DNA of 64,000 nt from Macrostomum hystrix (lineage: Eukaryota; Animalia; Platyhelminthes). The first letter of the stretch is position 1. The number at the start of each line of letters is the position of its first letter. Shown in pieces: positions 33,219-58,775 of the stretch. The notes under the pieces are model-generated. The model was not told the origin of the DNA and searched no databases. It saw nothing but the letters and a program-made list of their open reading frames with translations. The stretch spans positions 558,001 through 622,000 of the forward strand of contig CATNEN010000002.1 of assembly GCA_950097015.1 (NCBI GenBank), written 5' to 3'. The translations under genes were made by a program, and so were the position numbers.

Positions 33219-33391
33219 GCTGATTGTCCCGGCACGTGGTATCGCGCTTAAGTCGGGTCGTATCAAATTGGCTAGCCGCCCTTCTATTAGCTGGGCCCAC
33301 CAGACCGGGGTTAGTCCGATGCCTTGGCTGTAGAGCAGGGTGACCCGCCGGTCGCGTGCATAGGCCTGGCTGGGCGCGCATGTACAAACAA

Positions 33392-35700: not shown

Positions 35701-35803
35701 CAATCACCCCAGCTAATATTGCTATCCATTTAACAGCTGGATGAACTGAAGCAGTGCAGATTTTTGTGTTTTTCTAAATGACACAAATTGTGTCATGTCA
35801 CAG

Positions 35804-35873
35804 TGGAGTCGTGAATCGAACCCCCGACCTTCAAGTCGGGAGTCCGACGCTCTAACCACTAGACCACGAGCCC
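35804..35873 (-). repeat. tRNA-like pseudogene or SINE head (copies 48827-48896, 61935-62004)
   Basis: GGGCTCGTGGTCTAGTGGTTAGAGCG...GGTTCGATTCACGACTCCA has A and B boxes and 6/7 acceptor pairs, but the anticodon stem does not pair. Confidence 0.55.
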
Positions 35874-36932
35874 ACTCGGAGTCCAGCAACACCTATAGCT
35901 CTAAGCAAATTTCACTTACAATTCAATGTTTTGTGACCCACAGAGGTGCAGTAGACGGTGATAGCCATGTACTGTAAAATAGGATTTCGGAAATCGGAAC
36001 CTGTGCTACTCATACACTTTATTGCTATATTCATGATAACAAACTTCAAATAAGAAAATACAATAAATGTACGGCCACGTGTTTCTCATACTCTGAGCGT
36101 AAATTTTGTGTATATTAAGTAGTTAGCACATTTATTTAAATGCTTGAATAAATAAGCAAATAAAATGACTATACAATTTTGATAAACATTTTAGCGTAAA
36201 AGTACTGTCAGAAAATAGCTCCGCATATTATAAACTATAAGAAATTTTATAGAAATTAAAAATGTTCATCGCTTTATTAAAAGCTGCAATATTAACACTC
36301 AAAATGTCAGTCAGTTACCATTAAAGATTCTAAAGCTTGAAATAGAATATCTTGCTGTGTAGCTCTTAACAGGAATAAACAACGAGATAACTTCCGGATT
36401 CATTCTAGGCATATGTATAACTTATTCGTGAGCACCGACTGTGGTTCAACCTGTGCTTCACCAGGGCGCAACTCTAAATATAGAGAAACTAAAGTATTGA
36501 TGGATACACTGGAAATTCAATCCTTATATTAAGAATATTTCACAATTTAAACACGGGATTATAAACAAAAAATGTCTAATTATAGCGAGTCATCTAGAAT
36601 AAGTTCTAAACAGGAAGAATTACTGAATATTTACTTTTGATAAATTTCTACAGCTAATAGAATGTGTTTATTAAAAGGAAGACAGCCATCGAGGACGAAC
36701 TCAGCAAGAAGGATAACAGTTTCCTGAACAATTCTTTGAAGTCAAGTCTTGAACGTGAGAACTATTAGCACAATTTCTTACACTGACTACTCTAAAGCAC
36801 TTAGAGCTACATTCAGTGCACTTCAGTATGCTCAGCAACTTCCAGTTGAAATAAAAGCAAGTCCATGTCCGTATTTTATCCATGACTCGTCGATAAACTA
36901 AACTCGACTTTCTAATTTTAAAGCACTCGCCA

Positions 36933-39900
36933 CTACATCTGGCCCTCTTGATGGACACCCTCCATCGAATCAAGTGGCTGGCGTATGACTCGTCCATTGC
37001 AGTCGCAGCTGACAAATGTCCTACCGTCGGTGTCAATGTGACCCACAATGTCTGTGTACAAGGTGAGGCTGCTCTCGGAGAGCTCTGCTGGCGGAAACTG
37101 ACTAGATGCCCCCGGTTCTGGTTTCACCACTTGCAAGTAAACATCACCGGAGTCTGCGTAAGAGGTACCAGGCATGATTAGTGGCAGGGCAGGTGCTACA
37201 GACTTAGCCGCATTGTCATGTGTCGCTAGTGTGCCTGTTTTGCTAGGTATTGCCAGCTTTGTAGATTTGCCATTTGAGCCACATTTGGTTGGCTTAGCAG
37301 TTTTGCTGAGAGAAGCACGTTTAGCATTAGAGGCTCGATCAGATCTGGGGCGCGAGGCGGATTTGGCCGTTGACAGCGGTCGGACTCGTCTCTCAACAGC
37401 CAGTTCAGAGACTCTGCGGCCAGTGGCGTCCGTCGGCTTGCGGCGGCTGCGCACGATGCAGAGAGCCACAATGAGACCCAGGGTGAGCAGCGAGGCCGTT
37501 GTTGCCGAGATGCCAATTCCCACTGATATGAAGAACAGATGGGTGGGCTCAGTTGAAGAGCCTCCTGGAATCGAAGTGGTGGTCCATTGATTTGCAGTAA
37601 CTGAAAGTATACATCGAGCAATGAGTATTTTAAATTTAATTTCAGCTTTTGTATGGCAGAAAAAAAACAGAATACAATCAAAATATATAAAATAAATCAG
37701 CGTCAAATCATTCTAAATGTCGGAAAAAATAGGATACAAATGTAGTGTCAGCTTGTTTGCCCTTCTATCTCCCCGTGTTATTATTCAGTACTTATTTTTA
37801 GACGTGTATTTTGCTAAGAGTTCACCCACGCCAAGCCGGGCCGGACCAGCTGGGGGAACGGACGCCCACCACCCGGCGAGCGCTACCCCTGGGCTACGGT
37901 CCCGGCCAATCAGCGAGCGACCCGGCCTCACTACCTGTCTACCCTCGGCAAGAAGCGACCCCGGGGCTCAGAACGGCGGTCGCAAGTCTACTGCGATTTG
38001 TCGCCTTGGCTCAAGCTACAGCCAGGCATCCACCTCGCCGATCGACCTAATTTGGGGTTAAAATGACTCTATATAACGAAGCGTGTTTTTGTAGTCCAAA
38101 TTATCTTTTTCTTCGCAATTCGCCTCACACTGTGAGAAGCACGTGCAAATTATTGTTCTCCGCAATTCGCCTCACACTGTGAGAAGCACGTGCAAACTAT
38201 AGTCCACTTGTTTTGTCCCTCCCCGCCCGACCACACTCCGCTTGTTCAGTTAGGTAGCTTTCGGCGCTACGCGTCTTGAGAGTGCGCCGCTGACAAGGGT
38301 GGTCTAGATAGGCGCTTGTTGTCGAAGTCAGTACGTGCTCTCTTCGGAGACTCCGCCGTCAGGCAGAAGGAGTGCCAACCGATAGGATCTGTCGGGGCAG
38401 CGCTGAAAGCAGAGACAACTGGAGCCTCTCGGGAAGAGTAGGGCGCGGATGTAGGCCAGTTAAGTAAAAATTGTTATATCCAAATTGTTAGACCAGACTT
38501 GCTTCTCACTGTGAGCGCGCTATAATTTATTTCCGTGTGAACATCTATTCTGTCAGTAAAACTTTTAAGTCAAGTGAACGATATTCAAAGTAATTCCTAT
38601 TCGTATCTGTAATCTTAGTCACAGCCAATTAACTCACTCCTAATCAAATTATTCGAGTCTTCGCGTTCATACTGTGTTATTCTTTTTCATTGGGAGTTTC
38701 GCCGGGCCGGAGGACGACACACTGGTCTTATCGCTTATCTATTCCACTTCGCTCGCTACCGCATTCTCTAACGCTATTTAATTCCAGATTTCCCTGCTGC
38801 TATTGAAACGATTGGTAGGACACCGACCCCGGTGAATAGTGAATAGTCGCTAGCTTCAAATACCTCACGCTCCAGCTAGGACATTCATTTTATTACACAA
38901 AGGATACGTAAATTACTATATGATATAAAGGCTAAGGCAAAAATTAAACATTTTTACTTTGGCTTGCCTGTAACTCCCGTACGAATACGGCAGTTTTATC
39001 AGTCAATTGACTTACTTATCAAACTACTGAATGCAACACTATGCGCTCACAATCAGCTGTGAGGCTTTCTACGAGCGCAAACTCAAAACAAGGCCTAAAC
39101 TTTTCTCTCCGTGGCAATGGCTGGCTGGCTTAGAATATCTATGGTCTATCACATAGGGAACCACTCCGATTATTTTTTCGCTAAAATTTCGTCTGTTAAG
39201 CCTGCATTGTGCAAACAGACAAAAGACTACAGAACGGGATGTTTATTGCAAGGATACCAGTCTAATACAGCCTTTGTCCAAAAGACAAACAATCATTTCA
39301 TTGGGTCTGAGGCAGAGCATGCGTCAACTTACAACCGTCAAAACGGAAATTAGAAACTAGAAAACTGTTCAACCGACAATCGCATGAACTGATTAGTTGT
39401 TAGATAAGCTATTGATAAGCTACGAGCTAGCACTGCCTTTACTCAACTGAATAATCTATGACGACTCAAAAGCAACACAAATTAAAAAGCGATCGCAATG
39501 AGCTTAGCTTAGCATTTCGCATATACAATGTACTTACTTAACTCACTGCAGTTAAATGAATGCTCTGTTCGATTGAGCACATTCTTGCCAGCTGCAGTTT
39601 GATTAACGTGGCAGACTATCCGGACATGGCTTGGAGCTTGGCATTGCTGCAGTGAAATCTTGAGAATCGTACCATTTTCAACTGGTAAAAGTTTCGGCAC
39701 TGACACACTGGAATCGCTCTGCAAAGTTGGGGTAGCGCTTTGAATTTCGGAATACTTGTGAAGGGATGGACACGTCAGGCACGTCAGAAGCGCATGGATG
39801 CTTAAGAATTTGTGAAGAAATAACACGAGCGAAAGTCAGGAAGGAAGCAGAAGACGGAAATTAGGGAGCTCTTCTTAGACGATAGAATATGCTTGTATTG

Positions 39901-42900
39901 ACATTACAAAGCTGATACGAGCGAATCTGACAAGGGCAATGGTGGGATGATTGACAAAGTGAACTATTGCATTAGAGTATTTCAATCAATATAAGCAAAA
40001 CTAGTAGCATGTTAATAATAATAATATTCCAGGAGGGCTGCGGGCAATGGCACATCATTTAGTGACACTAGACCCGCAGCAACCCCGAAACTTGTAGCGT
40101 AAAAGGACAACGAATTTCCAAACCTATATGAAGAAATGGACTCACTAAATTCATCGAACACATTTTACTTGGCTTTGGATTCGCTTCCGAAACTGAAACT
40201 TCAACAAACGCGTGACTTTGGTTCGGTCCATGAAGCTTGAAGGTAACCTGAGGCTGATCTACAAAGAAATAAATCAATAGCAGAAGCTGGTGATTGGATG
40301 ATGATAAAAAATTTATGAGAACTATTCTGTATCTCTCACAAAATACGCTGACGTTTTGAACAAGCTGATCAGCTCTGCTTGAGCACGGGTGATTGGCGAT
40401 GCACACCAGTTTGGACCCGTGCATCGATCGATGCGCTGTGATGCGGAACGTGGACTGGCCGTTTGATTCAGAAATATTTTCTAGTGAGATCTTCTCCTGC
40501 AAAGCAGTTTATTCAGTTATTTTGTGCTTATGCGATTCTTATATGTCAATAAAGAAATTGAAAACATACAGATTGCAGTTTAGTCTTGAGCTGCAGCCAG
40601 CATTGGTGCTTCACTTGAGGGCTATCACTGACTGAGCTGACATTGACAGAAATGACGTCGCCCTCCCAAACACTGACAGTCTGCGTTGCTGTCCATCTGC
40701 TTTCGGGCTGCTCTAAAACGGAATAATTGTATCATTAAGAACGCTAAACGTAAACGAATCAGTGCGCAGTGTCATCAGGCGAGACGCTGGGTTGTGTACT
40801 ATTTTCCGTCAGTCTAATTATTGATTCCGACTTCCGTTTCGACTACCTCTTCCACTTCCATCTGATGCTACCCAAACCTCTTATTGGTCAAATCTCAAAA
40901 AATCAATCCGATTGATACAGATTGAAGTCTCGCTGTTTTGCGCAACCCAACCACAATGACTCCTGCAAGGCTTTGAAAGGTACCGACTTGTGCTCAATGG
41001 AGCTCATTCACTGTGCATGCGAATCTTTTCCTAAGTTCTCTGAGTGCAATAGCTCGACACACTAGCGGATAGTTTTTCACCTGCTCCCAAGGCATACGAT
41101 CAAAGTTATTAGGACACGGCCAATGCCGCATGTCGCAACGAATACATACAGCACTATCGAGCTGTTTTGGCCGGGGTCGGTGGCAGAGCGGTTAACGCTT
41201 TTGACTCTCGCACCAAGGTCCCTAAGTTCAATTCCACGGCGAGGCCACATTTGAAGGGGGCGCAGACGCGGAGGGAGGCTTATGGGTGTAACTACGAGCT
41301 CTCCCGCATCTCATCGCTCCGCTGTCTCATCTTTTCCTGTCTCATCTCTCACGTGTCTCATCTCTCCTCTCGTACAATTCAGGCTAAACTTGTTTCTGTT
41401 CATAAAAAATATAAATGTTTGCATGTATAAAGTCACACACAAGCTTAAGTTTCTCTAACAGTGCGGGCATCTCAGAGCAATCAACGAGAAGTACTCACTT
41501 TGCAGGTTAATTATGCTGCTGTTAAACTCTGCCGCATCGGCACCCGAGAAATTTTGCTTCATTCTGCAGCTAATCACCTTCCCACTGTCCTCCAATGTCA
41601 CGTTGAAACTGAAGGCAAAGCCACCCTGGACCACTTTCTGCAAAAATGTAACCATGGTATCTTAAGACTTCGCTTTAAGCAATCCCAGTCACACATGGGA
41701 TAGCTGATGTCGGGGCTAAAGTGATTTAAGCATTTTGTACTTGGCCTCACATTGCGTGACTCTGAAAATGTGCCAGCGAAAGTGCAGCTGACAAATGAGG
41801 CTTCAGGATTTCCAAGGTCGGTCACATTGAGGCGGAAATGTGCAGTGAAGCCGTGACACAAGACTGGGGACAGCTGCTGTACTGTTGCAGCTGGCCGGTC
41901 TACAATGGAATAACATTCGTATTTAGATTGTGTATGACACTTGCAATCTGTTCTACACTGCTTATTTTGAAAGAGAGAATGCCAGTATGAACTTTTCGGT
42001 AAATTCAGGGAGGAAAAACCTCAGTAAAAACGGAGACTATTGACCAAGTCCGAGGGCATTGAGTAGATATACTCTAGGAATATACATCTAGAAGTGTTAG
42101 TTGGACTCTGTCAGAGTCTGAAATTTAATAAAGAATTCGAATAGTGTCTGTATATACTCGCATGCGCATTGACCGCTAAAACAAACTGCTCAGAAACATT
42201 TTTTCTTACGTTGAATGGCTTCTTTGTAAGTCCCGTGACTGGGACACGTCACTTGTGTACCACTCAGTGGAAAGTAGGAAATTTACATTCTTGGGGTTCG
42301 CTTCCAGCCCAGTTGCTATGCCAAATATCCATTAGCAACCAGCTAAGGCAAAGAGGAATTTGAAGTACAGAAGCAAATAAAGCAGAGAATGGAGCATCAT
42401 CATGAGACAGGGTACAGCAGAAAGGGGAGGGACAGGAGACGATAAGAAATAATTGTGCAAACAAACAATATTTCCAAAATGGAATTTGCTAGCAATCTAC
42501 AAGCCTTTGGGTTTCCATGAAACTGATCAGCTTCTTCCAGCCAGAGAACAGACCCAGGCTACTCACAGTACACAGGTGGAGCATTTATAGACTCGTTCCT
42601 TTCACAGCCGAGTCCCGGCTGGCTCACAGAGCACCGGATGCGGGCTGAAGAACCCCATCGTCTGGATGCGTTTCCGGTGAAAGACTCGCTTGCGACTGAC
42701 TTCTGCAGAAATGAAGCCGAGAAATCAGCGACCATTTCTCATGAAAGTAGCTCAAAATGTCCAACTAATGAAGGCATGTGACTTCAAATCTCCCATTATT
42801 TCTTAGAAAGCTGCTCGTGATAGAATTATTGGACATTCTACAATCTTTCATAAACTACTTACAGAAAGGCTTCTCATTGTTTCTTCTCCTTGCTGGGTGA

Positions 42901-45672
42901 GCACTGAGCAATGATAGCTGGTGTGAAACGGCCAGTTGCTGCTTGTTGAGTTCACTGTGACACTGACGACTGATCCTTCCAGCCAGTAGCTGCCGGGTGA
43001 CAGTGAGATGCGAGCCTCACAGGGGTCTGAAGTGCACGCAGGGTGTAAGCAAGGATAATGATTCGCTTGTCACACGTGCTTCAAATATTTCTATCTAAGA
43101 TTTTGTAGCATATCAGCTTACAAACTAACGGAGGAATTTTCAGTGTTTGCTTTGTAGTTTCAGATTTGGTATTGTACGCAGAGTGGCTCTCATTTGAACT
43201 TAATTCTTGTCCACAAAAGATACAGCTGTTCTCCAGGGATGAGCTCACATCCAACCTGAACTCGTAGACCACGTTTAGACAGAAGTGGCACGAGCTGGTG
43301 CTTTTGGTGCTTTTGGTTTCCAATTTCTGAAAATGTCGGCAACGAGTATGTTTAGTCCGACTCATTGCCAAATATGACTGCCATGTGCTAGCTGTCTTAC
43401 ATTCACTCACCACGAGCTTCCTTTTTATTTCGTATGTTGAGTATTTCTGACATTTGTAAGTAACTTGTTGTTCTCCAGGTCCAATTATCTGCTCCAAGCA
43501 GTTGCAAACTCTACAGGCAATCAATGTCACAGGAAATCCGCCATCACTGGTGACGCTGAAGTTGATGGATCTTCCTTCTACCCAGAACTGGCGCCCACCG
43601 ATTTGAAGACCGGAATCATTGAAGTTAAATAGCAAGTCTTTGGGTGTCACTGAGTGAATTGTGGGCATTCATTTATTATATAATTCAGTTTACGGCATGT
43701 AAAACCAACAAGAGAATCATATTACTTAAAAAATTATAATATTTTGTTATAGTATTCAGAGGGATGCAATCGGCTGCCATTGCGCAACCGTCAGTCAAAT
43801 TGACCCGAACCTAGCGGGGCCGCAGCATGAAAAATGTAGTGAGAATGGATCTGGACCCTTGATGTGTGAGTCTCATCAGATATCATAATACGGTGGAATG
43901 CCAGACTGCATGATCGCACAGCTGACACTGTTGAAGGCAGCTAATCTGAGAGCTCTCTGATTCGGAGAGCTAATCTGAGGTCAGCAACGATTTGATCCGC
44001 TGAGTTCATTCAATCTCTCTTGTTTTCATCGTGAGAAAAGTAAACAAATCAGTAAAATGCATATCGAGTACCATCGAATTGCAGCCTTGTCGAGGCACTG
44101 CGGGTTGAGTTGTGGCAGCTGAATTCGCACAGGAGAACCCAATCGAACAGACTGTTCATTGGTTTGAGTTCCAGCAAAAAGTTCCATGCCTCAGGCTTCA
44201 AAACTTTCTGGAATAAGAAAATATCACCACTCCGTGCTTGCTGACAGGCAAAACTGATCAACCAAGGTGAATGGTCAGCTCAGGACTTACCAATGTCCCA
44301 TTCCACTGCTCGCCAGCCTGAGATGTGATGCTGCAGCTGGGATGTCTGCCGGAATCCACTGGGCACAGCAGAGACACGTTCACATGGATTGAATCACCGA
44401 GTTTCAAATGTTTCAGCCCAGGTTTGCATCGCTCAGTCTTGCTCGAGACGGAGGCACAAGTAGAAAAATAAGCATGGTTTGCTTCTGCAAAGGAGTGATA
44501 GATACCCAGTGTTTTAGAGAGAGTAGAACAAGTCCATATTTCAAGTCCAAAAACATTCAGTTCGGAATATTACAAGCGCATAGCAATTTTAAGGCTCAAT
44601 GAGATAAATGAGATACGAAAGCTCACCTTCTGTGATATCCAAGCCGTTGAAGGATGAGAATGAACTCCCTCGACGCTGCCGAATAAGAATGTGCTCAGTC
44701 GGCTGCAATGTGAGTTGCGATGCATGAGCTTAGAACAGTCATCTGATCAATCTGGACTCTCAGTCGAGTCAGTGGAGAGTGCAGTTACCAGTGGAATGGC
44801 GGTCCTGTTGCACTGCACGAAGAACTCCGCAGTCGAGCCGGCTGAGACGCCTGCCCAGCCGCAGGAGGACAGAGCGGTCGAGTTGTGTCTGAGCACGGCG
44901 CGGCAGTTCGAGTCAGCCGCGAACGCTTCAGGTGGCAACCAGCTGCCGAGGAGAACCTGCAAGCCGCTGCCTCCAGCTGAAATTGCAAAGCGGCTGCCTT
45001 GACAACAACGAACTGACTCTGAGCTCAGCTGCGACTCACCTGCGTGCACAGTGACAGACAGCACTCGGACTTCTCTGACCAGCTTCAGCAGCAGCCAGTG
45101 GTAGCCGTCAGAGTCAGCGACTCTCCCGAGGCTCCAGGGCCGCTCGCTGAACTGGGACTCGCTGACGCAGCTCGGAGAACTGGCTCCGCCGGACTGCCAA
45201 GCGGCAGCCACGTCCGCGATGGAGACGCGGAACGTCCGGCTGTCAGCCGCGCCTGCCAGTAGGCCTGAGGGTGGTGTAATGAGGTCGAATTATGTAGAAA
45301 TAACATGCAGAAATGTAGCAGGCAGTCACGGTACATTAATGGTCATTTTGGAGTGATAAAAATGGCTCCGGTCTGAAATCTCCTCTCCAAAGATTTTATG
45401 CGACCGATTGAATAAATACAGAATTGAACTCACTGCCAACTGAAATGGCTGTGACAGCTGACGCAATACGAGCTATTAGGTTAGGGAATTTCAAGTTTTG
45501 CAAGAAGATCAAATTTTTATTTAGTTTTTTCTTGAATTTTTAAGAATACACAGCTGTTTAATAAATCATTTAACGAGTTGCTGGTTTGTAAGTCTGTTAG
45601 GTTGCCGTTTGTTTCTTGATTGAGCTTTTGTGATCGAGGATTGAGTTCAGTATCGCAGCATTCTTACCACAC

Positions 45673-45716
<44 letters not shown>

Positions 45717-45767
45717 TAAGGACCACAAGAAGCTCTGCCAAGAAGACAGTTGACAAAAGCTCGGCAT
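36933..45767 (-). CDS. Ig-superfamily-like single-pass receptor, copy A (complete within window)
   Basis: Signal exon 45767-45668; Ig exons as in copy 0; phase-1 donor at 39547 splices to the TM/tail exon 37600-36933 (FISVGIGISATTASLLTLGLIVALCIV-RSRRK; DVYLQV, TLYTDI). Confidence 0.78.
37741..38897. mobile_element. Solo LTR (1157 bp) in the last intron
   Basis: TGTAGT...ATTACA ends, 4-bp TSD CAAA, internal 36-bp duplication (38114-38149, 38161-38196); empty site in unit 3. Confidence 0.8.
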
Positions 45768-48700: not shown

Positions 48701-51700
48701 CCACCCTAAATTACCAAAACTACCAATCACCCCAGCTAATATTGCTATCCATTTAACAGCTGGATGAACTGAAGCAGTGCAGATTTTTGTGTTTTTCTAA
48801 ATGACACAAATTGTGTCATGTCACAGTGGAGTCGTGAATCGAACCCCCGACCTTCAAGTCGGGAGTCCGACGCTCTAACCACTAGACCACGAGCCCACTC
48901 GGAGTCCAGCAACACCTATAGCTCTAAGCAAATCTCACTTACAATTCAATGTTTTGTGACCCACAGAGGTGCAGTAGACAGTGGTAGCCATGTATTGTAA
49001 AATGGGATTTCGGAAATCGGAACCTGTGCTACTCATACACTTTATTGCTATATTCATGATAACAAACTTCAAATAAGAAAATACAATAAATGTACGGCCA
49101 CGTGTTTCTCATACTCTGAGCGTAAATTTTGTGTATATTAAGTAGTTAGCACATTTATTTAAATGCTTGAATAAATAAGCAAATAAAATGACTATACAAT
49201 TTTGATAAACATTTTAGCGTAAAAGTACTGTCAGAAAATAGCTCCGCATATTATAAACTATAAGAAATTTTATAGAAATTAAAAATGTTCATCGCTTTAT
49301 TAAAAGCTGCAATATTAACACTCAAAATGTCAGTCAGTTACCATTAAAGATTCTAAAGCTTGAAATAGAATATCTTGCTGTGTAGCTCTTAACAGGAATA
49401 AACAACGAGATAACTTCCGGATTCATTCTAGGCATATGTATAACTTATTCGTGAGCACCGACTGTGGTTCAACCTGTGCTTCACCAGGGCGCAACTCTAA
49501 ATATAGAGAAACTAAAGTATTGATGGATACACTGGAAATTCAATCCTTATATTAAGAATATTTCACAATTTAAACACGGGATTATAAACAAAAAATGTCT
49601 AATTATAGCGAGTCATCTAGAATAAGTTCTAAACAGGAAGAATTACTGAATATTTACTTTTGATAAATTTCTACAGCTAATAGAATGTGTTTATTAAAAG
49701 GAAGACAGCCATCGAGGACGAACTCAGCAAGAAGGATAACAGTTTCCTGAACAATTCTTTGAAGTCAAGTCTTGAACGTGAGAACTATTAGCACAATTTC
49801 TTACACTGACTACTCTAAAGCACTTAGAGCTACATTCAGTGCACTTCAGTATGCTCAGCAACTTCCAGTTGAAATAAAAGCAAGTCCATGTCCGTATTTT
49901 ATCCATGACTCGTCGATAAACTAAACTCGACTTTCTAATTTTAAAGCACTCGCCACTACATCTGGCCCTCTTGATGGACACCCTCCATCGAATCAAGTGG
50001 CTGGCGTATGACTCGTCCATTGCAGTCGCAGCTGACAAATGTCCTACCGTCGGTGTCAATGTGACCCACAATGTCTGTGTACAAGGTGAGGCTGCTCTCG
50101 GAGAGCTCTGCTGGCGGAAACTGACTAGATGCCCCCGGTTCTGGTTTCACCACTTGCAAGTAAACATCACCGGAGTCTGCGTAAGAGGTACCAGGCATGA
50201 TTAGTGGCAGGGCAGGTGCTACAGACTTAGCCGCATTGTCATGTGTCGCTAGTGTGCCTGTTTTGCTAGGTATTGCCAGCTTTGTAGATTTGCCATTTGA
50301 GCCACATTTGGTTGGCTTAGCAGTTTTGCTGAGAGAAGCACGTTTAGCATTAGAGGCTCGATCAGATCTGGGGCGCGAGGCGGATTTGGCCGTTGACAGC
50401 GGTCGGACTCGTCTCTCAACAGCCAGTTCAGAGACTCTGCGGCCAGTGGCGTCCGTCGGCTTGCGGCGGCTGCGCACGATGCAGAGAGCCACAATGAGAC
50501 CCAGGGTGAGCAGCGAGGCCGTTGTTGCCGAGATGCCAATTCCCACTGATATGAAGAACAGATGGGTGGGCTCAGTTGAAGAGCCTCCTGGAATCGAAGT
50601 GGTGGTCCATTGATTTGCAGTAACTGAAAGTATACATCGAGCAATGAGTATTTTAAATTTAATTTCAGCTTTTGTATGGCAGAAAAAAAACAGAATACAA
50701 TCAAAATATATAAAATAAATCAGCGTCAAATCATTCTAAATGTCGGAAAAAATAGGATACAAATGTAGTGTCAGCTTGTTTGCCCTTCTATCTCCCCGTG
50801 TTATTATTCAGTACTTATTTTTAGACGTGTATTTTGCTAAGAGTTCACCCACGCCAAGCCGGGCCGGACCAGCTGGGGGAACGGACGCCCACCACCCGGC
50901 GAGCGCTACCCCTGGGCTACGGTCCCGGCCAATCAGCGAGCGACCCGGCCTCACTACCTGTCTACCCTCGGCAAGAAGCGACCCCGGGGCTCAGAACGGC
51001 GGTCGCAAGTCTACTGCGATTTGTCGCCTTGGCTCAAGCTACAGCCAGGCATCCACCTCGCCGATCGACCTAATTTGGGGTTAAAATGACTCTATATAAC
51101 GAAGCGTGTTTTTGTAGTCCAAATTATCTTTTTCTTCGCAATTCGCCTCACACTGTGAGAAGCACGTGCAAATTATTGTTCTCCGCAATTCGCCTCACAC
51201 TGTGAGAAGCACGTGCAAACTATAGTCCACTTGTTTTGTCCCTCCCCGCCCGACCACACTCCGCTTGTTCAGTTAGGTAGCTTTCGGCGCTACGCGTCTT
51301 GAGAGTGCGCCGCTGACAAGGGTGGTCTAGATAGGCGCTTGTTGTCGAAGTCAGTACGTGCTCTCTTCGGAGACTCCGCCGTCAGGCAGAAGGAGTGCCA
51401 ACCGATAGGATCTGTCGGGGCAGCGCTGAAAGCAGAGACAACTGGAGCCTCTCGGGAAGAGTAGGGCGCGGATGTAGGCCAGTTAAGTAAAAATTGTTAT
51501 ATCCAAATTGTTAGACCAGACTTGCTTCTCACTGTGAGCGCGCTATAATTTATTTCCGTGTGAACATCTATTCTGTCAGTAAAACTTTTAAGTCAAGTGA
51601 ACGATATTCAAAGTAATTCCTATTCGTATCTGTAATCTTAGTCACAGCCAATTAACTCACTCCTAATCAAATTATTCGAGTCTTCGCGTTCATACTGTGT

Positions 51701-51973
51701 TATTCTTTTTCATTGGGAGTTTCGCCGGGCCGGAGGACGACACACTGGTCTTATCGCTTATCTATTCCACTTCGCTCGCTACCGCATTCTCTAACGCTAT
51801 TTAATTCCAGATTTCCCTGCTGCTATTGAAACGATTGGTAGGACACCGACCCCGGTGAATAGTGAATAGTCGCTAGCTTCAAATACCTCACGCTCCAGCT
51901 AGGACATTCATTTTATTACACAAAGGATACGTAAATTACTATATGATATAAAGGCTAAGGCAAAAATTAAACA
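38951..51973. repeat. Tandem array unit 2 (13,023 bp)
   Basis: Colinear and near-identical to units 1 and 3 (offset 13023 to the start of unit 3). Confidence 0.95.
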
Positions 51974-54900
51974 TTTTTACTTTGGCTTGCCTGTAACTCC
52001 CGTACGAATACGGCAGTTTTATCAGTCAATTGACTTACTTATCAAACTACTGAATGCAACACTATGCGCTCACAATCAGCTGTGAGGCTTTCTACGAGCG
52101 CAAACTCAAAACAAGGCCTAAACTTTTCTCTCCGTGGCAATGGCTGGCTGGCTTAGAATATCTATGGTCTATCACATAGGGAACCACTCCGATTATTTTT
52201 TCGCTAAAATTTCGTCTGTTAAGCCTGCATTGTGCAAACAGACAAAAGACTACAGAACGGGATGTTTATTGCAAGGATACCAGTCTAATACAGCCTTTGT
52301 CCAAAAGACAAACAATCATTTCATTGGGTCTGAGGCAGAGCATGCGTCAACTTACAACCGTCAAAACGGAAATTAGAAACTAGAAAACTGTTCAACCGAC
52401 AATCGCATGAACTGATTAGTTGTTAGATAAGCTATTGATAAGCTACGAGCTAGCACTGCCTTTACTCAACTGAATAATCTATGACGACTCAAAAGCAACA
52501 CAAATTAAAAAGCGATCGCAATGAGCTTAGCTTAGCATTTCGCATATACAATGTACTTACTTAACTCACTGCAGTTAAATGAATGCTCTGTTCGATTGAG
52601 CACATTCTTGCCAGCTGCAGTTTGATTAACGTGGCAGACTATCCGGACATGGCTTGGAGCTTGGCATTGCTGCAGTGAAATCTTGAGAATCGTACCATTT
52701 TCAACTGGTAAAAGTTTCGGCACTGACACACTGGAATCGCTCTGCAAAGTTGGGGTAGCGCTTTGAATTTCGGAATACTTGTGAAGGGATGGACACGTCA
52801 GGCACGTCAGAAGCGCATAGATGCTTAAGAATTTGTGAAGAAATAACACGAGCGAAAGTCAGGAAGGAAGCAGAAGACGGAAATTAGGGAGCTCTTCTTA
52901 GACGATAGAATATGCTTGTATTGACATAACAAAGCTGATACGAGCGAATCTGACAAGGGCAATGGTGGGATGATTGACAAAGTGAACTATTGCATTAGAG
53001 TATTTCAATCAATATAAGCAAAACTAGTAGCATGTTAATAATAATAATATTCCAGGAGGGCTGCGGGCAATGGCACATCATTTAGTGACACTAGACCCGC
53101 AGCAACCCCGAAACTTGTAGCGTAAAAGGACAACGAATTTCCAAACCTATATGAAGAAATGGACTCACTAAATTCATCGAACACATTTTACTTGGCTTTG
53201 GATTCGCTTCCGAAACTGAAACTTCAACAAACGCGTGACTTTGGTTCGGTCCATGAAGCTTGAAGGTAACCTGAGGCTGATCTACAAAGAAATAAATCAA
53301 TAGCAGAAGCTGGTGATTGGATGATGATAAAAAATTTATGAGAACTATTCTGTATCTCTCACAAAATACGCTGACGTTTTGAACAAGCTGATCAGCTCTG
53401 CTTGAGCACGGGTGATTGGCGATGCACACCAGTTTGGACCCGTGCATCGATCGATGCGCTGTGATGCGGAACGTGGACTGGCCGTTTGATTCAGAAATAT
53501 TTTCTAGTGAGATCTTCTCCTGCAAAGCAGTTTATTCAGTTATTTTGTGCTTATGCGATTCTTATATGTCAATAAAGAAATTGAAAACATACAGATTGCA
53601 GTTTAGTCTTGAGCTGCAGCCAGCATTGGTGCTTCACTTGAGGGCTATCACTGACTGAGCTGACATTGACAGAAATGACGTCGCCCTCCCAAACACTGAC
53701 AGTCTGCGTTGCTGTCCATCTGCTTTCGGGCTGCTCTAAAACGGAATAATTGTATCATTAAGAACGCCAAACGTAAACGAATCAGTGCGCAGTGTCATCA
53801 GGCGAGACGCTGGGTTGTGTACTATTTTCCGTCAGTCTAATTATTGATTCCGACTTCCGTTTCGACTACCTCTTCCACTTCCATCTGATGCTACCCAAAC
53901 CTCTTATTGGTCAAATCTCAAAAAATCAATCCGATTGATACAGATTGAAGTCTCGCTGTTTTGCGCAACCCAACCACAATGACTCCTGCAAGGCTTTGAA
54001 AGGTACCGACTTGTGCTCAATGGAGCTCATTCACTGTGCATGCGAATCTTTTCCTAAGTTCTCTGAGTGCAATAGCTCGACACACTAGCGGATACTTTTT
54101 CACCTGCTCCCAAGGCATACGATCCAAGTTATTAGGACACGGCCAATGCCGCATGTCGCAACGAATACATACAGCACTATCGAGCTGTTTTGGCCGGGGT
54201 CGGTGGCAGAGCGGTAAACGCATTTGACTCTCGCACCAAGGTCCCTAAGTTAAATTCCACGGCGAGGCCACATTTATATGGGGCCCAGACGCGGAGGGAG
54301 GCTTATGGGTGTAACTACGAGCTGTCCCGCATCTCATCGCTCCGCTGTCTCATCTTTTCCTGTCTCATCTCTCACGTGTCTCATCTCTCCTCTCGTACAA
54401 TTCAGGCTAAACTTGTTTCTGTTCATAAAAAATATAAATGTTTGCATGTATAAAGTCACACACAAGCTTAAGTTTCTCTAACAGTGCGGGCATCTCAGAG
54501 CAATCAACGAGAAGTACTCACTTTGCAGGTTAATTATGCTGCTGTTAAACTCTGCCGCATCGGCACCCGAGAAATTTTGCTTCATTCTGCAGCTAATCAC
54601 CTTCCCACTGTCCTCCAATGTCACGTTGAAACTGAAGGCAAAGCCACCCTGGACCACTTTCTGCAAAAATGTAACCATGGTATCTTAAGACTTCGCTTTA
54701 AGCAATCCCAGTCACACATGGGATAGCTGATGTCGGGGCTAAAGTGATTTAAGCATTTTGTACTTGGCCTCACATTGCGTGACTCTGAAAATGTGCCAGC
54801 GAAAGTGCAGCTGACAAATGAGGCTTCAGGATTTCCAAGGTCGGTCACATTGAGGCGGAAATGTGCAGTGAAGCCGTGACACAAGACTGGGGACAGCTGC

Positions 54901-57900
54901 TGTACTGTTGCAGCTGGCCGGTCTACAATGGAATAACATTCGTATTTAGATTGTGTATGACACTTGCAATCTGTTCTACACTGCTTATTTTGAAAGACAG
55001 AATGCCAGTTTAAACTTTTCGGTAAATTCAGGGAGGAAAAACCTCAGTAAAAACGGAGACTATTGACCAAGTCCGAGGGCATTGAGTAGATATACTCTAG
55101 GAATATACATCTAGAAGTGTTAGTTGGACTCTGTCAGAGTCTGAAATTTAATAAAGAATTCGAATAGTGTCTGTATATACTCGCATGCGCATTGACCGCT
55201 AAAACAAACTGCTCAGAAACATTTTTTCTTACGTTGAATGGCTTCTTTGTAAGTCCCGTGACTGGGACACGTCACTTGTGTACCACTCAGTGGAAAGTAG
55301 GAAATTTACATTCTTGGGGTTCGCTTCCAGCCCAGTTGCTATGCCAAATATCCATTAGCAACCAGCTAAGGCAAAGAGGAATTTGAAGTACAGAAGCAAA
55401 TAAAGCAGAGAATGGAGCATCATCATGAGACAGGGTACAGCAGAAAGGGGAGGGACAGGAGACGATAAGAAATAATTGTGCAAACAAACAATATTTCCAA
55501 AATGGAATTTGCTAGCAATCTACAAGCCTTTGGGTTTCCATGAAACTGATCAGCTTCTTCCAGCCAGAGAACAGACCCAGGCTACTCACAGTACACAGGT
55601 GGAGCATTTATAGACTCGTTCCTTTCACAGCCGAGTCCCGGCTGGCTCACAGAGCACCGGATGCGGGCTGAAGAACCCCATCGTCTGGATGCGTTTCCGG
55701 TGAAAGACTCGCTTGCGACTGACTTCTGCAGAAATGAAGCCGAGAAATCAGCGACCATTTCTCATGAAAGTAGCTCAAAATGTCCAACTAATGAAGGCAT
55801 GTGACTTCAAATCTCCCATTATTTCTTAGAAAGCTGCTCGTGATAGAATTATTGGACATTCTACAATCTTTCATAAACTACTTACAGAAAGGCTTCTCAT
55901 TGTTTCTTCTCCTTGCTGGGTGAGCACTGAGCAATGATAGCTGGTGTGAAACGGCCAGTTGCTGCTTGTTGAGTTCACTGTGACACTGACGACTGATCCT
56001 TCCAGCCAGTAGCTGCCGGGTGACAGTGAGATGCGAGCCTCACAGGGGTCTGAAGTGCACGCAGGGTGTAAGCAAGGATAATGATTCGCTTGTCACACGT
56101 GCTTCAAATATTTCTATCTAAGATTTTGTAGCATATCAGCTTACAAACTAACGGAGGAATTTTCAGTGTTTGCTTTGTAGTTTCAGATTTGGTATTATAC
56201 GCAGAGTGGCTAGCATTTGAACTTAATTCTTGTCCACAAGAGATACAGCGGTTCTCCAGGGATGAGCTCACATCCAACCTGAACTCGTAGACCACGTTTA
56301 GACAGAAGTGGCACGAGCTGGTGCTTTTGGTTTCCAATTTCTGAAAATGTCAGCAATTGTTTGTTTAGTCAGACTCATTGCCAAATATGACTGCCATGTG
56401 CTAGCTGTCTTACATTCACTCACCACGAGCTTCCTTTTTATTTCGTATGTTGAGTAGTTCTGACATTTGTAATTAACTTGTTTTTCTCCAGGTCTAATTT
56501 TCTGCTCCAAGCAGTTGCAAACTCTACAGGCAATCAATGTCACAGGAAATCCGCCATCACTGGTGACGCTGAAGATGACGGATCTTCCTTCTACCCAGAA
56601 CTGGCGCCCACCGATTTGTAGACCGGAATCATTGAAGTTTAATTGCAAGTCTATGGGTGTCACTGAGTGAATTGTGGGCATTCATTTATTATATAATTCA
56701 GTTTACGGCATGTAAAAACAACAAGAGAATCATATTACTTAAAAAATTATAATATTTTGTTATAGTATTCAGAGGGATGCAATCGGCTGCCATTGCGCAA
56801 CCGTCAGTCAAATTGACCCGAACCTAGCGGGGCCGCAGCATGAAAAATGTAGTGAGAATAGATCTGGACCCTTGTGAGTCTCATCAGATATCTTAATACG
56901 GTGGAATGCCAGACTGCATGATCGCACAGCTGACACTGTTGAAGGCAGCTAATCTGAGAGCTCTCTGATTCGGAGAGCTAATCTGAGGTCAGCAACGATT
57001 TGATCCGCTGAGTTCATTCAATCTCTCTTGTTTTCATCGTGAGAAAAGTAAACAAATCAGTAAAATGCATATCGAGTACCATCGAATTGCAGCCTTGTCG
57101 AGGCACTGCGGGTTGAGTTGTGGCAGCTGAATTCGCACAGGAGAACCCAATCGAACAGACTGTTCATTGGTTTTAGTTCCAGCAAAAAGTTCCATGCCTC
57201 AGGCTTCAAAACTTTCTGGAATAAGAGAAAATCACCACTCCGTGCTTGCTGACAGGCAAAACTGATCAACCAAGGTGAATGGTCAGCTCAGGACTTACCA
57301 ATGTCCCATTCCACTGCTCGCCAGCCTGAGATGTGATGCTGCAGCTGGGATGTCTGCCGGAATCCATTGGGCACAGCAGAGACACGTTCACATGGATTGA
57401 ATCACCGAGTTTCAAATGTTTCAGCCCAGGTTTGCATCGCTCAGTCTTGCTCGAGACGGAGGCACAAGTAGAAAAATAAGCATGGTTTGCTTCTGCACAG
57501 GAATGAGAGATACCCAGTGTTTTAGAGAGAGTAGAACAAGTCCATATTACAAGTCCAAAAACATTCAGTTCGGAATATTACGAGCGCATAGCAATTTTAA
57601 GGCTCAATGAGATCAATGAGATACGAAAGCTCACCTTCTGTGATATCCAAGCCGTTGAAGGATGAGAATGAACTCCCTCGACGCTGCCGAATAAGAATGT
57701 GCTCAGTCGGCTGCAATGTGAGTTGTGATGCATGAGCTTAGAACAGTCATCTGATCAATCTGGACTCTCAGTCGAGTCAGTGGAGAGTGCAGTTACCAGT
57801 GGAATGGCGGTCCTGTTGCACTGCACGAAGAACTCCGCAGTCGAGCCGGCTGAGACGCCTGCCCAGCCGCAGGAGGACAGAGCGGTCGAGTTGTGTCTGA

Positions 57901-58680
57901 GCACGGCGCGGCAGTTCGAGTCAGCCGCGAACGCTTCGGGTGGCAAACAGCTGCCGAGGAGAACCTGCAAGCCGCTGCCTCCAGCTGAAATTGCAAAGCG
58001 GCTGCCTTGACAACAACGAACTGACTCTGAGCTCAGCTGCGACTCACCTGCGTGCACAGTGACTGACAGCACTCGGACTTCTCTGACCAGCTTCAGCAGC
58101 AGCCAGTGGAAGCCGTCAGAGTCAGCGACTCTCCCGAGGCTCCAGGGCCGCTCGCTGAACTGGGTCTCGCTGACGCAGCTCGGAGAACTGGCTCCGCCGG
58201 ACTGCCAACCGGCAGCCGCGTCCGCGAGGGAGACGCGGAACGTCCGGCTGTCAGCCGCGCCTGCCAGTAGGCCTGAGGTTGGTGTAATTAGGTCGAATTA
58301 TGTATAAAAAACATGCAGAAATGTAGCAGGCAGTCACGGTACATTAATGGTCATTTTGGAGTGATAAAAATGGCTCCGGTCTGAAATCTCCTCTCCAAAG
58401 ATTTTATGCGACCGATTGAATAAATACAGAATTGAACTCACTGCCAACTGAAATGGCTGTGACAGCTGACGCAATACGAGCTATAAGGTTAGGGAATTTC
58501 AAGTTTTGCAAGAAGACCAAATTTTTATTTAGTTTTTTCTAGAATTTTTAAGAATACATAGCTGTTTAATAAATCATTTAACGAGTTTCTGGCTTGTAAG
58601 TCTGTTAGGTTGCCGTTTGTTTCTTGATTGAGCTTTTGTGATCGAGGATTGAGTTCAGTATCGCAGCATTCTTACCACAC

Positions 58681-58724
<44 letters not shown>

Positions 58725-58775
58725 TAAGGACCACAAGAAGCTCTGCCAAGAAGACAGTTGACAGAAGCTCGGCAT
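49956..58775 (-). CDS. Ig-superfamily-like single-pass receptor, copy B (complete within window)
   Basis: Same exon structure as copy A; ATG at 58775, TM exon 50623-49956. Confidence 0.78.
50764..51920. mobile_element. Solo LTR, copy shared with unit 1
   Basis: Appears identical to 37741-38897 with the same CAAA TSD. Confidence 0.8.

What the first reader, a model, noticed from the sequence alone, without database searches (positions are those of the whole stretch)
36933..58775. Tandem cluster of atypical Ig-like receptors with a non-canonical cysteine pattern and Tyr-motif tail
Seen: at least four gene copies at ~12-13 kb spacing. In four well-resolved domains the B-strand Cys position is Val (FSVTS, VTVNS, LNVTD, VNVSS), a Cys sits where the C-strand Trp is expected (LIAC, YHC, VSC, HQC), and the F-strand Cys is kept. 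The tail has DVYLQV and TLYTDI (ITSM-like TxYxxI). Known: CD4 D2 has a C-F disulfide, and clustered variable IgSF genes underlie invertebrate recognition systems such as Hydractinia Alr. Inference: an undescribed immune, allorecognition or adhesion receptor family.
Basis: partly seen in the sequence, partly recalled or inferred. Interest (0 to 1): 0.75.

Follow-up and report, generated by a model that had tools for sequence, protein, structure and literature searches.

The report
Flatworm lectin-headed Ig receptor gene array
A Macrostomum hystrix flatworm contig carries six tandem, nearly identical copies of an uncharacterised surface-receptor gene; all six of its antibody-like domains lack the usual cysteine-tryptophan core and instead keep a cysteine pair on two strands that are neighbours in an Ig fold. 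The genes look real and the pattern is unusual, but expression and function are untested.

Summary
The window (Macrostomum hystrix, contig 2) contains a tandem array with a period of about 13 kb. Two complete copies lie at 36933-45767 and 49956-58775, both on the minus strand. A third copy loses only its last exon at the window start, and only the last exon of a fourth lies inside the window end. The whole array has six copies, plus one broken copy on another contig.

I built a 15-exon model. All introns are GT-AG, all phases chain, and the reading frame is 1,021 aa. It is intact in five copies.

The cysteine pattern is real and family-wide. Strand C has Cys in 21 of 21 aligned domains, strand F in 16 of 16, and strand B never.

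A confident model of a M. lignano relative's domain matches C2-type Ig domains (Z about 10).

The only relatives found are uncharacterised M. lignano proteins. This scan had already reported the same lectin-Ig-tail family at six or more other clusters in this genome.

Transcription, the disulfide itself, the ligand and any immune or allorecognition role remain untested.

The parts
34416..47438 (.). Tandem repeat unit A (13,023 bp) carrying gene copy UA
   Evidence: Self-BLAST: 99.2% identical to 47439-60501. Placed within the array on contig C2.
47439..60501 (.). Tandem repeat unit B carrying gene copy UB
   Evidence: Identical to unit A over 34416-43100. Differences are concentrated in the part that encodes the head, D1 and D2.
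36933..45767 (-). Gene copy UA: 15 exons, reading frame of 1,021 aa
   Evidence: All introns are GT-AG and all phases are consistent. M. lignano P0005 aligns colinearly, exon by exon.
45668..45767 (-). Exon 0: start codon and signal peptide, including a run of 13 Cys encoded by an (AGC)n microsatellite
   Evidence: The donor is GTAAGA in phase 1. The run length differs between copies in multiples of 3.
44789..45264 (-). Exon 1: most of the lectin-like (F-type lectin / discoidin-like) head
   Evidence: Intact in all 7 copies. It matches the heads of M. lignano P0002 and P0004. Those relatives give weak PF00754 and PF22633 hits. hhalign aligns its core motif with a genuine F-type lectin domain of the same genome, P = 0.005.
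44627..44702 (-). Exon 1b: last strands of the head
   Evidence: Phases 0 to 1 link exon 1 to exon 2. By eye it lines up with the end of the head in M. lignano P0005 (read); no tool alignment covers this exon.
44291..44484 (-). Exon 2: first half of Ig-like domain D1 (HVNVS ... PSC)
   Evidence: D1 is the most variable domain between copies: 23 nonsynonymous against 3 synonymous variable sites.
44072..44207 (-). Exon 2b: second half of D1 (F-strand VLLCE)
43407..43649 (-). Exon 3: whole short Ig-like domain D2 (FSVTS, LIAC, YKC). An alternative phase-1 donor lies 6 nt further on, at 43401.
   Evidence: The AlphaFold model has seven strands but pLDDT 46.5, so it is unreliable.
42863..43026 (-). 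Exon 4: first half of D3 (VTVNS, YHC)
   Evidence: 31.6% identical to M. lignano D3, E = 9e-5.
42567..42702 (-). Exon 4b: second half of D3 (RIRCSV)
41751..41899 (-). Exon 5: first half of D4 (LNVTD, VSC)
41499..41637 (-). Exon 6: second half of D4 (EDSGKVISC, the classic Ig F-strand motif D-x-G-x-[YV]-x-C)
40570..40712 (-). Exon 7: first half of D5 (VNVSS, HQCW)
40340..40496 (-). Exon 8: second half of D5 (SKLVCIA)
   Evidence: Pfam C2-set_2, E = 0.001. The tblastn match to P0005 ends at the exon limits.
40146..40258 (-). Exon 8b: first half of D6 (VEVSVS, KMC)
39547..39718 (-). Exon 9: second half of D6 (RIVCHV)
36933..37600 (-). Exon 10: stalk, transmembrane helix followed by RSRRK, and a 190-aa cytoplasmic tail with SYADS, DVYLQV and TLYTDI, then the stop codon
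   Evidence: pN/pS is 0.34 between copies. The motifs are kept in all copies.
37742..38897 (.). Dispersed repeat of about 1.13 kb inserted in the last intron of UA. The same insertion sits in UB at about 50765-51920. It is absent from the other copies.
   Evidence: Gap in the copy alignment. At least 40 copies genome-wide at 91-98% identity.
49956..58775 (-). Gene copy UB: same 15 exons, intact 1,021-aa frame. Exon limits: 58775-58676, 58272-57797, 57710-57635, 57492-57299, 57215-57080, 56662-56420, 56049-55886, 55725-55590, 54922-54774, 54660-54522, 53735-53593, 53519-53363, 53281-53169, 52741-52570, 50623-49956.
597..7078 (-). Gene copy U1, exons 0 to 9. Its last exon lies just before the window start, at C2:557144-557811.
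   Evidence: The frame is intact (1,013 aa).
63078..63745 (-). Last exon (membrane anchor and tail) of gene copy U4. The rest of U4 lies beyond the window end.

Best explanation
The region holds two complete copies of a 15-exon gene, and the window holds parts of two more. They belong to a recently amplified six-copy tandem array in Macrostomum hystrix.

The gene encodes a type I membrane glycoprotein of about 1,020 aa. It belongs to a receptor family that I found only in the genus Macrostomum. The parts, in order, are:
- a signal peptide;
- a divergent head resembling an F-type lectin or discoidin domain;
- six C2-type Ig-like domains;
- one transmembrane helix;
- a disordered tail with three tyrosines.

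Shown here:
- the gene structure and the intact frames;
- constraint on the four membrane-proximal Ig domains and the tail;
- an Ig fold for the family's D3 domain;
- a family-invariant Cys on strand C, at the position of the canonical Trp, and on strand F, with no Cys on strand B.

Inferred:
- Each Ig domain is pinned by a same-sheet C-F cross-strand disulfide of the CD4 domain 2 type, in place of the usual B-F cross-sheet bond.
- The head plus D1 and D2, which are the variable parts, bind the ligand.
- Ligand binding is relayed through phosphorylation of the tail tyrosines. These are Y-L-Q-V and, 28 residues later, T-L-Y-T-D-I, a spacing like an ITIM/ITSM pair. They would dock SH2-domain proteins.

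The array evolves by unequal crossing-over and gene conversion. What the receptor recognises is unknown.
For: Gene model:
- All introns are GT-AG and the phases chain.
- Splice sites are kept in 7 of 7 copies and the frame is intact in 5.
- Exons of D3-D6 vary in 2.0% of sites against 6.9% for their introns, p = 2e-11. Across D3-D6 plus the tail the nonsynonymous:synonymous count is 21:15, below neutral, p = 0.014.
- M. lignano P0005 aligns colinearly, exon by exon.

Ig fold:
- AlphaFold model of M. lignano P0009 domain D3, pLDDT 84-94.
- VIA-align matches to ICAM-1 D3 (Z 10.6), Necl-4 Ig2 (Z 10.6, rmsd 1.9 over 88 residues), CD22, SYG-2 and Rst.
- Foldseek hits are nearly all IgSF proteins.
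- Pfam C2-set_2: 21.4 bits against a cut-off of 21 in P0005, and E = 0.001 on window exon 8.
- Nectin-4, E = 0.004.
- The nearest Atlas clusters are CD80-like C2-set, score 0.95.

Cysteine pattern:
- Invariant V-x-V, Pro and Cys in the first-half exons, and invariant Cys in the second halves.
- Across the clusters of this genome and M. lignano: 21 of 21 Cys on strand C, 16 of 16 on strand F, none on strand B.
- In the model, Cys70 sits in strand C (66-74) and Cys109 in strand F (106-113).

Head.

Tail: transmembrane helix and motifs; pN/pS 0.34.

Array and mosaicism.
Against:
- The one window domain I could fold by itself, exon 3, gave pLDDT 46.5. The confident Ig model is of a relative only 32-35% identical.
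- No coordinates were available, so the C-F disulfide is inferred from strand assignment and textbook Ig geometry, not measured.
- The head gives no Pfam hit in the window copy. It has no PDB sequence match. It lacks the His and Arg of the fucose-binding motif that align in other family members.
- The tail motifs are short, and the copies are too alike for their conservation to mean much.
- D1 and D2 variation is statistically compatible with neutral drift.
Confidence: 0.65

Rival explanations
1. The gene encodes a cell-cell adhesion molecule of the nectin, SynCAM, Kirre or ICAM type, with homophilic or heterophilic binding in tissue architecture or synapses. It would not be an immune or allorecognition receptor. 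The tail tyrosines would serve endocytosis (YxxPhi) or scaffold binding.
For: - The best structural matches are all adhesion molecules: ICAM-1, ICAM-5, Necl-4, SYG-2, Rst and CD166.
- The Pfam and Atlas neighbours are the CD80-like C2-set and nephrin type.
- YLQV fits the YxxPhi sorting motif.
Against: - Classic adhesion molecules are usually conserved across phyla and low in copy number.
- This family was found only in Macrostomum.
- It sits in several tandem clusters and was amplified very recently.
- Its distal domains are its least constrained part.
Confidence: 0.2
2. It is a reproduction-related recognition protein, acting in sperm-egg contact, sperm-tissue contact or partner recognition. 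It would evolve fast because of sexual selection in a hypodermically inseminating, selfing hermaphrodite.
For: - The family is genus-restricted and turns over quickly.
- The distal domains are variable.
- The M. hystrix genome paper stresses high turnover of reproduction-related genes (PMC10468722).
Against: I have no expression data of any kind for this locus. Tails with tyrosine motifs and lectin-plus-Ig builds are more typical of somatic receptors.
Confidence: 0.1
3. The array is real DNA but is silent or decaying: a recently amplified segment whose open frames persist only because the copies are young. Alternatively, copies UA and UB are two haplotypes or an assembly duplication of a single locus.
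For: - UA and UB are 100% identical over 8.7 kb.
- The copy on contig C31 is broken, with a frameshift in exon 3 and a stop in exon 4.
- The edge copy U0 lacks the tail exon.
- No transcripts were found.
Against: - Copies that differ by 3-5% (U0, U1 and U5 against UA) still keep every splice site, and all but U0 keep the frame.
- Exons are 3.5 times less variable than introns in the D3-D6 region (p = 2e-11), and nonsynonymous sites are depleted there and in the tail. Both indicate purifying selection.
- The segment-by-segment relationships are mosaic, as expected of true paralogues that exchange sequence.
Confidence: 0.1

Closest known systems
Uncharacterised Macrostomum lignano proteins A0A1I8GPA9, A0A1I8H8M2, A0A1I8GMR9, A0A1I8IZW3, A0A1I8J1C7, A0A1I8J119 and A0A1I8HM06 ('Ig-like domain-containing protein')
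   Same: - Same order of parts: signal peptide, lectin-like head, D1-D6; one of them also shows the membrane anchor and a tyrosine tail.
- Same half-domain pattern.
- Same Cys on strands C and F with none on strand B.
- A poly-Cys-coding tract at the 5' end.
   Different: - Only about 29-36% identical in the head and about 32-35% in D3.
- Their tail carries VYYYEEN and EFYVQL instead of DVYLQV and TLYTDI.
- They are closer to other M. hystrix clusters, on contigs C3, C7 and C31, than to this array.
C2-type IgSF adhesion molecules (nectin/Necl, ICAM, SYG-2/nephrin, Rst/Kirre; Pfam C2-set_2)
   Same: The fold of the modelled domain (Z 9.6-10.6, rmsd 1.9-2.6 over 88-93 residues). The G-x-P spacing before strand C. 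The D-x-G-x-[YV]-x-C motif on strand F. A multi-domain type I membrane layout.
   Different: Those families keep the B-strand Cys, the C-strand Trp and the F-strand Cys. Here strand B has Val, Phe, Ile or Leu, and the Trp position is Cys in every domain. They have no lectin-like head. They are conserved across phyla rather than limited to one genus.
CD4 domain 2 (cross-strand C-F disulfide)
   Same: The disulfide partners lie on strands C and F of the same sheet instead of B and F across sheets (CD4: PMC4354306). The strand positions of the two Cys in the model fit this arrangement.
   Different: In CD4 this is one exceptional domain out of four. Here it is the rule in all six domains and throughout a gene family. 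Actual bonding was not tested here.
Siglecs / CD22
   Same: The overall design: a sugar-binding-type head, a stalk of C2-type Ig domains, and a tail with ITIM/ITSM-type tyrosines. CD22 Ig2 is a top structural match (Z 10.2).
   Different: The Siglec head is itself a V-set Ig domain that binds sialic acid. Here the head is a different fold type, resembling an F-type lectin or discoidin domain, and it lacks the aligned His and Arg sugar-binding residues. There is no sequence relationship.
Mollusc FREPs and other 'variable Ig plus lectin' molecules; Hydractinia Alr allorecognition genes
   Same: Lineage-specific, clustered, diversified invertebrate genes that combine Ig-like domains with a lectin-type or other recognition domain (my own knowledge, not tested here).
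   Different: FREPs are secreted, with Ig domains at the N-terminus and the lectin-type domain at the C-terminus. Alr proteins have their own domain types and proven polymorphism. Neither polymorphism nor a recognition function is shown here.

Membership tests
Immunoglobulin superfamily (Ig-like domain) | Two-sheet Greek-key beta-sandwich with strands A, B, E (D) and G, F, C (C') | tested here: met
   For the family's D3 domain in the M. lignano relative: pLDDT 84-94, eight strands, Z up to 10.6 to Ig domains. For the window's own exon 3 domain the model was too weak to judge.
Immunoglobulin superfamily (Ig-like domain) | Canonical core: Cys on strand B, Trp on strand C, Cys on strand F | tested here: not met
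   Strand B never has Cys. The Trp position, six residues after the conserved Pro, is Cys in 21 of 21 domains. The F-strand Cys is kept in 16 of 16. This is a known tolerated deviation (CD4 D2), not an exclusion.
Immunoglobulin superfamily (Ig-like domain) | Detection by curated sequence profiles | tested here: inconclusive
   C2-set_2 scores 21.4 bits against a cut-off of 21 in P0005, and E = 0.001 on window exon 8. No hit on the other nine window exons. Nectin-4 in the PDB, E = 0.004.
F-type lectin / F5/8 type C (galactose-binding-domain-like) head | Match to the Pfam models PF22633 or PF00754 | tested here: inconclusive
   The window head gives no hit at E <= 1. Relatives reach E = 0.004-0.06, below the cut-offs. 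PF22633 finds at least 150 other domains in this genome, but this array is not among the 150 best-scoring places listed. hhalign against one genuine domain gives P = 0.005 and probability 7%, aligned on the core motif W-L-L-L-K-L ... S-V-T-V.
F-type lectin / F5/8 type C (galactose-binding-domain-like) head | Fucose-binding His ... Arg-x-Asp motif | tested here: not met
   Other clusters of the family have F-H-S/T and G-R-T-D at the aligned columns. The window copies have a gap and H-A-G-E-S there.
F-type lectin / F5/8 type C (galactose-binding-domain-like) head | Jelly-roll beta-sandwich fold | not tested
Earlier scan notes call the head lectin-shaped in other clusters; I did not check this.
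ITIM/ITSM-bearing inhibitory receptors | ITSM: T-x-Y-x-x-V/I in the cytoplasmic tail | tested here: met
   TLYTDI is present in all copies. It is a six-residue motif, so chance is not negligible (my rough estimate is about 2% for a tail with three Tyr).
ITIM/ITSM-bearing inhibitory receptors | ITIM: S/I/V/L-x-Y-x-x-I/V/L | tested here: not met
   DVYLQV has Asp at position -2. It fits only the looser YxxV pattern.
ITIM/ITSM-bearing inhibitory receptors | Tyrosine phosphorylation and recruitment of SH2 phosphatases or adaptors | not testable with these tools
   This needs biochemistry.
Macrostomum lectin-Ig-tail receptor family (reported earlier by this scan at other loci) | Lectin-like head, Ig stalk, single transmembrane helix and tyrosine tail, in tandem clusters, found only in the genus | tested here: met
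   Architecture. Head and Ig exons match further clusters on contigs C3, C7 and C31. The only outside relatives are from M. lignano.
Allorecognition systems (Hydractinia Alr, Botryllus FuHC type) | High allelic polymorphism within populations, and control of fusion or rejection | not testable with these tools
   Only one assembly of an inbred, selfing line is available. Differences between paralogues are not alleles.

The most novel reading that the evidence does not exclude
The Macrostomum lectin-Ig receptors would define a new structural subclass of Ig domain. In it the canonical B-F disulfide and the Trp that packs against it have been replaced throughout, in every domain of every family member, by a CD4-D2-type cross-strand C-F disulfide. 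Such bonds are strained and redox-labile. The whole stalk could then act as a redox-switchable or mechanically switchable rod in a diversifying recognition system specific to this genus (immune, self/non-self or mating).
Probability: 0.15. Interest if true: 0.8.

Novelty: new variant of a known kind. Interest (0 to 1): 0.5.

Why it matters
Free-living flatworms have almost no described surface recognition receptors. This gene family is large, clustered and limited to one genus, and it combines a lectin-type head, an Ig stalk and tyrosine tails. That makes it an obvious candidate for pathogen, self or partner recognition in a model genus where RNAi and transgenesis are available.

There is also a structural question. 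If the same-sheet C-F disulfide is confirmed in all six domains, the Ig fold can dispense with its most conserved core (Cys-Trp-Cys) across a whole family, not only in isolated domains such as CD4 D2.

The array is also a clean example of very recent gene amplification. It has 13-kb units up to 99.2% identical, and the copies have exchanged segments in a mosaic fashion.

Tried and rejected
- Pfam on the ten candidate reading-frame segments of the window copy that I had picked out at that stage: only one weak C2-set_2 hit.
- Word-index protein search with the tail exon: nothing found.
- Language-model Atlas search with exon 3: no usable hit.
- AlphaFold of window exon 3 with its six near-identical copies: pLDDT 46.5, so I did not use it for a fold search.
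- Profiles of the first-half and second-half exons against PDB sequences: nothing significant. The second-half profile's top hits, not significant (E about 1), were the E-F strand regions of Ig constant domains.
- Head profile against PDB sequences: no hit.
- Idea from a scan note that the same ectodomain is spliced to a second kind of tail. The edge copy U0 does lack the tail exon, and a different ORF containing a transmembrane segment lies downstream (C2:544156-544590). I found no convincing acceptor site in the right phase, so this is left open.
- Reading exon 1 as two further Ig-like domains, which was my own first guess. I rejected it after the matches to the M. lignano heads and the F5/8-type-C signal.
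- Positive selection on D1 and D2: the counts (23:3 and 12:3) differ from the rest of the gene (p = 0.012) but not from neutrality (p = 0.14 and 0.59), so I do not claim it.
- P0001 and P0003 from the large search are spurious repeat matches.
All searches were exon by exon and by reference. The exons were concatenated only inside scripts, to check the frame and to count substitutions.

Full report
SOURCE. The window is not human. The assembly statistics given by the tools are 220,453,370 bases in 42 contigs, with contig lengths including 13,505,968 and 35,345,953. These equal those published for Macrostomum hystrix (PMC10468722). The window is contig C2:558001-622000.

THE REPEAT. Self-BLAST shows a tandem segmental duplication with a period of 13,023 bp. 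Unit A (34416-47493) is 99.2% identical to unit B (47439-60501). A third unit starts at 60583 and runs off the window. An older copy (95.5-96.9% identical) occupies 1-8122. Between 8.1 and 34.4 kb lies transposable-element-rich DNA, including a fragment of a unit at 32856-33846.

I fetched the flanks and aligned the units. The array has six units on C2: U0, U1, UA, UB, U4 and U5, spanning about 546-642 kb. A seventh copy, 85-94% identical, lies on contig C31.

GENE MODEL. I read the minus strand and found 15 exons whose GT-AG introns chain in phase into one 1,021-aa frame. Five of the Ig-like domains are split into a first-half exon (phase 1 to 0) and a second-half exon (phase 0 to 1). One domain (exon 3) and most of the head (exon 1) are single exons.

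Every acceptor and donor is conserved in all seven copies. Exon lengths are identical in all copies on C2, apart from the microsatellite-bearing first exon and U0's missing last exon. The frame is intact in U1, UA, UB, U4 and U5. U0 lacks the last exon. The C31 copy has a frameshift in exon 3 and a stop in exon 4.

M. lignano protein P0005 aligns to the locus colinearly, and the matches stop at the predicted exon limits.

The spliced protein itself was not submitted to any search or fold tool. All searches used single exons by reference. The exons were joined only inside scripts, to check the frame and count substitutions.

No transcript evidence could be obtained.

THE PROTEIN. It starts with a signal peptide whose hydrophobic core is a run of 13 Cys encoded by an (AGC)n microsatellite. 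A head of about 185 aa follows (exons 1 and 1b), then six Ig-like domains D1-D6. The ectodomain has 20 N-x-S/T sites. After it come a transmembrane helix followed by RSRRK and a Ser/Ala/Lys-rich tail of 190 aa. The tail's three tyrosines lie in SYADS, DVYLQV and TLYTDI.

THE HEAD. I searched 1.84 billion representative proteins with exon 1. Only two true relatives came back, both from M. lignano.

The heads of those relatives and of their paralogues give weak F5/8 type C and NedA-like galactose-binding hits (E = 0.004-0.06). I aligned the head with head exons from other M. hystrix clusters. The shared motifs are W-Q-S-S, one Cys, G-Y-x-W-L-L-L-K-L and S-V-T-V. hhalign places this core on the W-W ... 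S-V-R-I-Y-N-R-x-D-C-C core of a genuine F-type lectin domain from the same genome (P = 0.005, probability only 7%).

Where other family members have F-H-S/T and G-R-T-D, the window copies have neither the His nor the Arg-x-Asp. I therefore call the head lectin-like. I claim neither family membership nor sugar binding.

THE IG-LIKE DOMAINS. The six domains align to each other. Across the first-half exons the invariant residues are V-x-V, one Pro and one Cys. Across the second halves one Cys is invariant.

The Cys of the first half lies six residues after the Pro of the G-x-P turn. In I-set and C2-set domains that position holds the canonical Trp (this is my own knowledge of the spacing). D4 keeps the classic F-strand motif (E-D-S-G-K-V-I-S-C).

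The window's own single-exon domain folded poorly (pLDDT 46.5). I therefore built an alignment of M. lignano P0009, its paralogues, 18 exon fragments from other M. hystrix clusters and the window's exons. MAFFT stacked the repeats on domain D3. AlphaFold then modelled D3 at pLDDT 84-94 as an eight-strand sandwich.

Foldseek hits are almost all IgSF proteins. An all-against-all structural alignment gives ICAM-1 D3 and Necl-4 Ig2 at Z 10.6, then CD22, ICAM-5, SYG-2, Rst and CD166. Weaker supporting evidence is Pfam C2-set_2 at its threshold, nectin-4 and the CD80-like C2-set Atlas neighbours. The refuting condition 'non-Ig fold' is not met.

THE CYSTEINE PATTERN. In the stacked alignment the strand C column is Cys in 21 of 21 sequences. 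The strand F column is Cys in 16 of 16. The three inward-facing strand B columns hold Val, Phe, Ile, Leu or Met and never Cys.

In the model, Cys70 lies in the middle of strand C (66-74) and Cys109 in the middle of strand F (106-113). If the strand ends are aligned, these two residues come out as direct antiparallel partners.

In canonical Ig domains the C-strand Trp and the F-strand Cys are cross-strand neighbours facing the core (established structural knowledge). CD4 domain 2 has exactly such a cross-strand disulfide (PMC4354306). A C-F disulfide in every domain is therefore the natural reading. It remains an inference, because no coordinates or chemistry were available.

EVOLUTION OF THE COPIES.
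- Constraint: in the D3-D6 region the exons are variable at 2.0% of sites and the introns at 6.9% (p = 2e-11). Nonsynonymous changes are depleted in D3-D6 plus the tail (21:15, p = 0.014). These parts are under constraint, which argues against a dead array.
- Variable part: the head, D1 and D2 exons vary about as much as their introns. D1 has 23 nonsynonymous against 3 synonymous variable sites, and D2 has 12 against 3. That differs from the rest of the gene (p = 0.012) but not from neutrality (p = 0.14 and 0.59). Relaxed constraint and diversifying selection cannot be told apart.
- Mosaicism: which copy is closest to which changes from segment to segment. For example, UA matches U4 in D2, matches UB in D3 and the tail, and groups with UB and U4 in D4-D6. 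This indicates unequal crossing-over or gene conversion.
- Age: a 1.13-kb dispersed repeat sits in the last intron of UA and UB only. Their duplication is therefore the youngest event.

FAMILY CONTEXT. The head and Ig exons match further clusters on contigs C3 (about 8.00-8.04 Mb), C7 (537-597 kb) and C31 (several sites). The M. lignano proteins are closer to those clusters than to this array.

Earlier notes of this scan describe the same lectin-Ig-tail family at six or more other loci of this genome, some said to be transcribed. I did not check those claims. None of the notes I retrieved mentions the cysteine pattern.

Two word-index searches and the large search found no relatives outside Macrostomum. 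Literature searches found no paper on the family.

MECHANISM AND LIMITS.
- Shown: a constrained, intact, multi-copy gene for a type I membrane protein with an Ig stalk.
- Inferred: the C-F disulfides, ligand binding by the variable distal part, and signalling through tail tyrosines. TLYTDI fits the ITSM pattern exactly. DVYLQV is only YxxV and is not an ITIM. The two tyrosines are 28 residues apart.
- Unknown: expression, ligand, cell type and any immune or allorecognition role.

The rivals are an adhesion molecule, a reproductive recognition protein, and a silent or mis-assembled array. Each is listed with the result that would settle it.

VERDICT. This is a new variant of a known kind (an IgSF receptor). 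Its systematically non-canonical disulfide pattern is worth structural follow-up.

Noticed in passing
window 45674-45714 and 58682-58722; L003:4841-4924; L004:6647-6730; L005:8498-8572: The (AGC)n microsatellite lies inside the first coding exon and encodes a poly-Cys run in the signal peptide. The run is 13 Cys in UA and UB; exon lengths imply about 8 in U0 and U4 and about 5 in U1 and U5. The C31 copy has 6. M. lignano relatives P0005-P0007 carry a poly-Cys-coding tract just upstream of their start Met.
   Followed up: partly
window 37742-38897 and about 50765-51920: A 1.13-kb dispersed repeat with at least 40 copies in the genome at 91-98% identity, and an internal 47-bp tandem duplication. 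It is inserted in the last intron of UA and UB only, which dates their duplication as the most recent.
   Followed up: partly
G000:C2:540000-546300 (L002), upstream of the window: The edge copy U0 has exons 0-9 but no tail exon. Downstream lie a different ORF containing a transmembrane segment (C2:544156-544590, no Tyr motifs, no convincing acceptor), rearranged unit fragments (540568-542137) and an ORF that looks like a rhodopsin-type GPCR (537665-538702).
   Followed up: partly
L007/L008 (G000:C31:782000-791000): The paralogous copy on contig C31 is broken. Exon 3 carries a 1-nt insertion and a 27-nt deletion (frameshift), and exon 4 has a stop codon. Its head and tail exons remain open.
   Followed up: yes
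whole genome G000 (e.g. C1:8455000-8498000, C1:6621000-6637000, C3:4453000-4462600): PF22633 (F-type-lectin-like domain) gives at least 150 matches in M. hystrix, about 130 of them over the cut-off and many in dense tandem runs. This is a very large lectin-domain expansion, separate from the array studied here.
   Followed up: no
P0008 (M. lignano A0A1I8J1C7) and P0002 (A0A1I8HM06): P0008 begins with the tail of one family member and continues into the head of the next. This looks like a read-through gene model and implies tandem arrays in M. lignano too. P0002 joins the first half of one Ig domain to the second half of the next. The symmetric exon phases allow that, so it may be exon skipping or a misprediction.
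   Followed up: no
window 8123-34415: About 26 kb of transposable-element-rich, partly GC-rich DNA splits the array between U1 and UA. It contains a stray unit fragment (32856-33846) and internal repeats (29694-30213 matching 31995-32514; 17414-17761 matching 21554-21901). Other first-reader notes cover this stretch.
   Followed up: no
G000:C2:642746-642904 (L018): Just beyond the last unit of the array there is an exon of a more distant family member (45% identical to M. lignano D5, E = 1e-5). The array therefore abuts another lectin-Ig gene.
   Followed up: no
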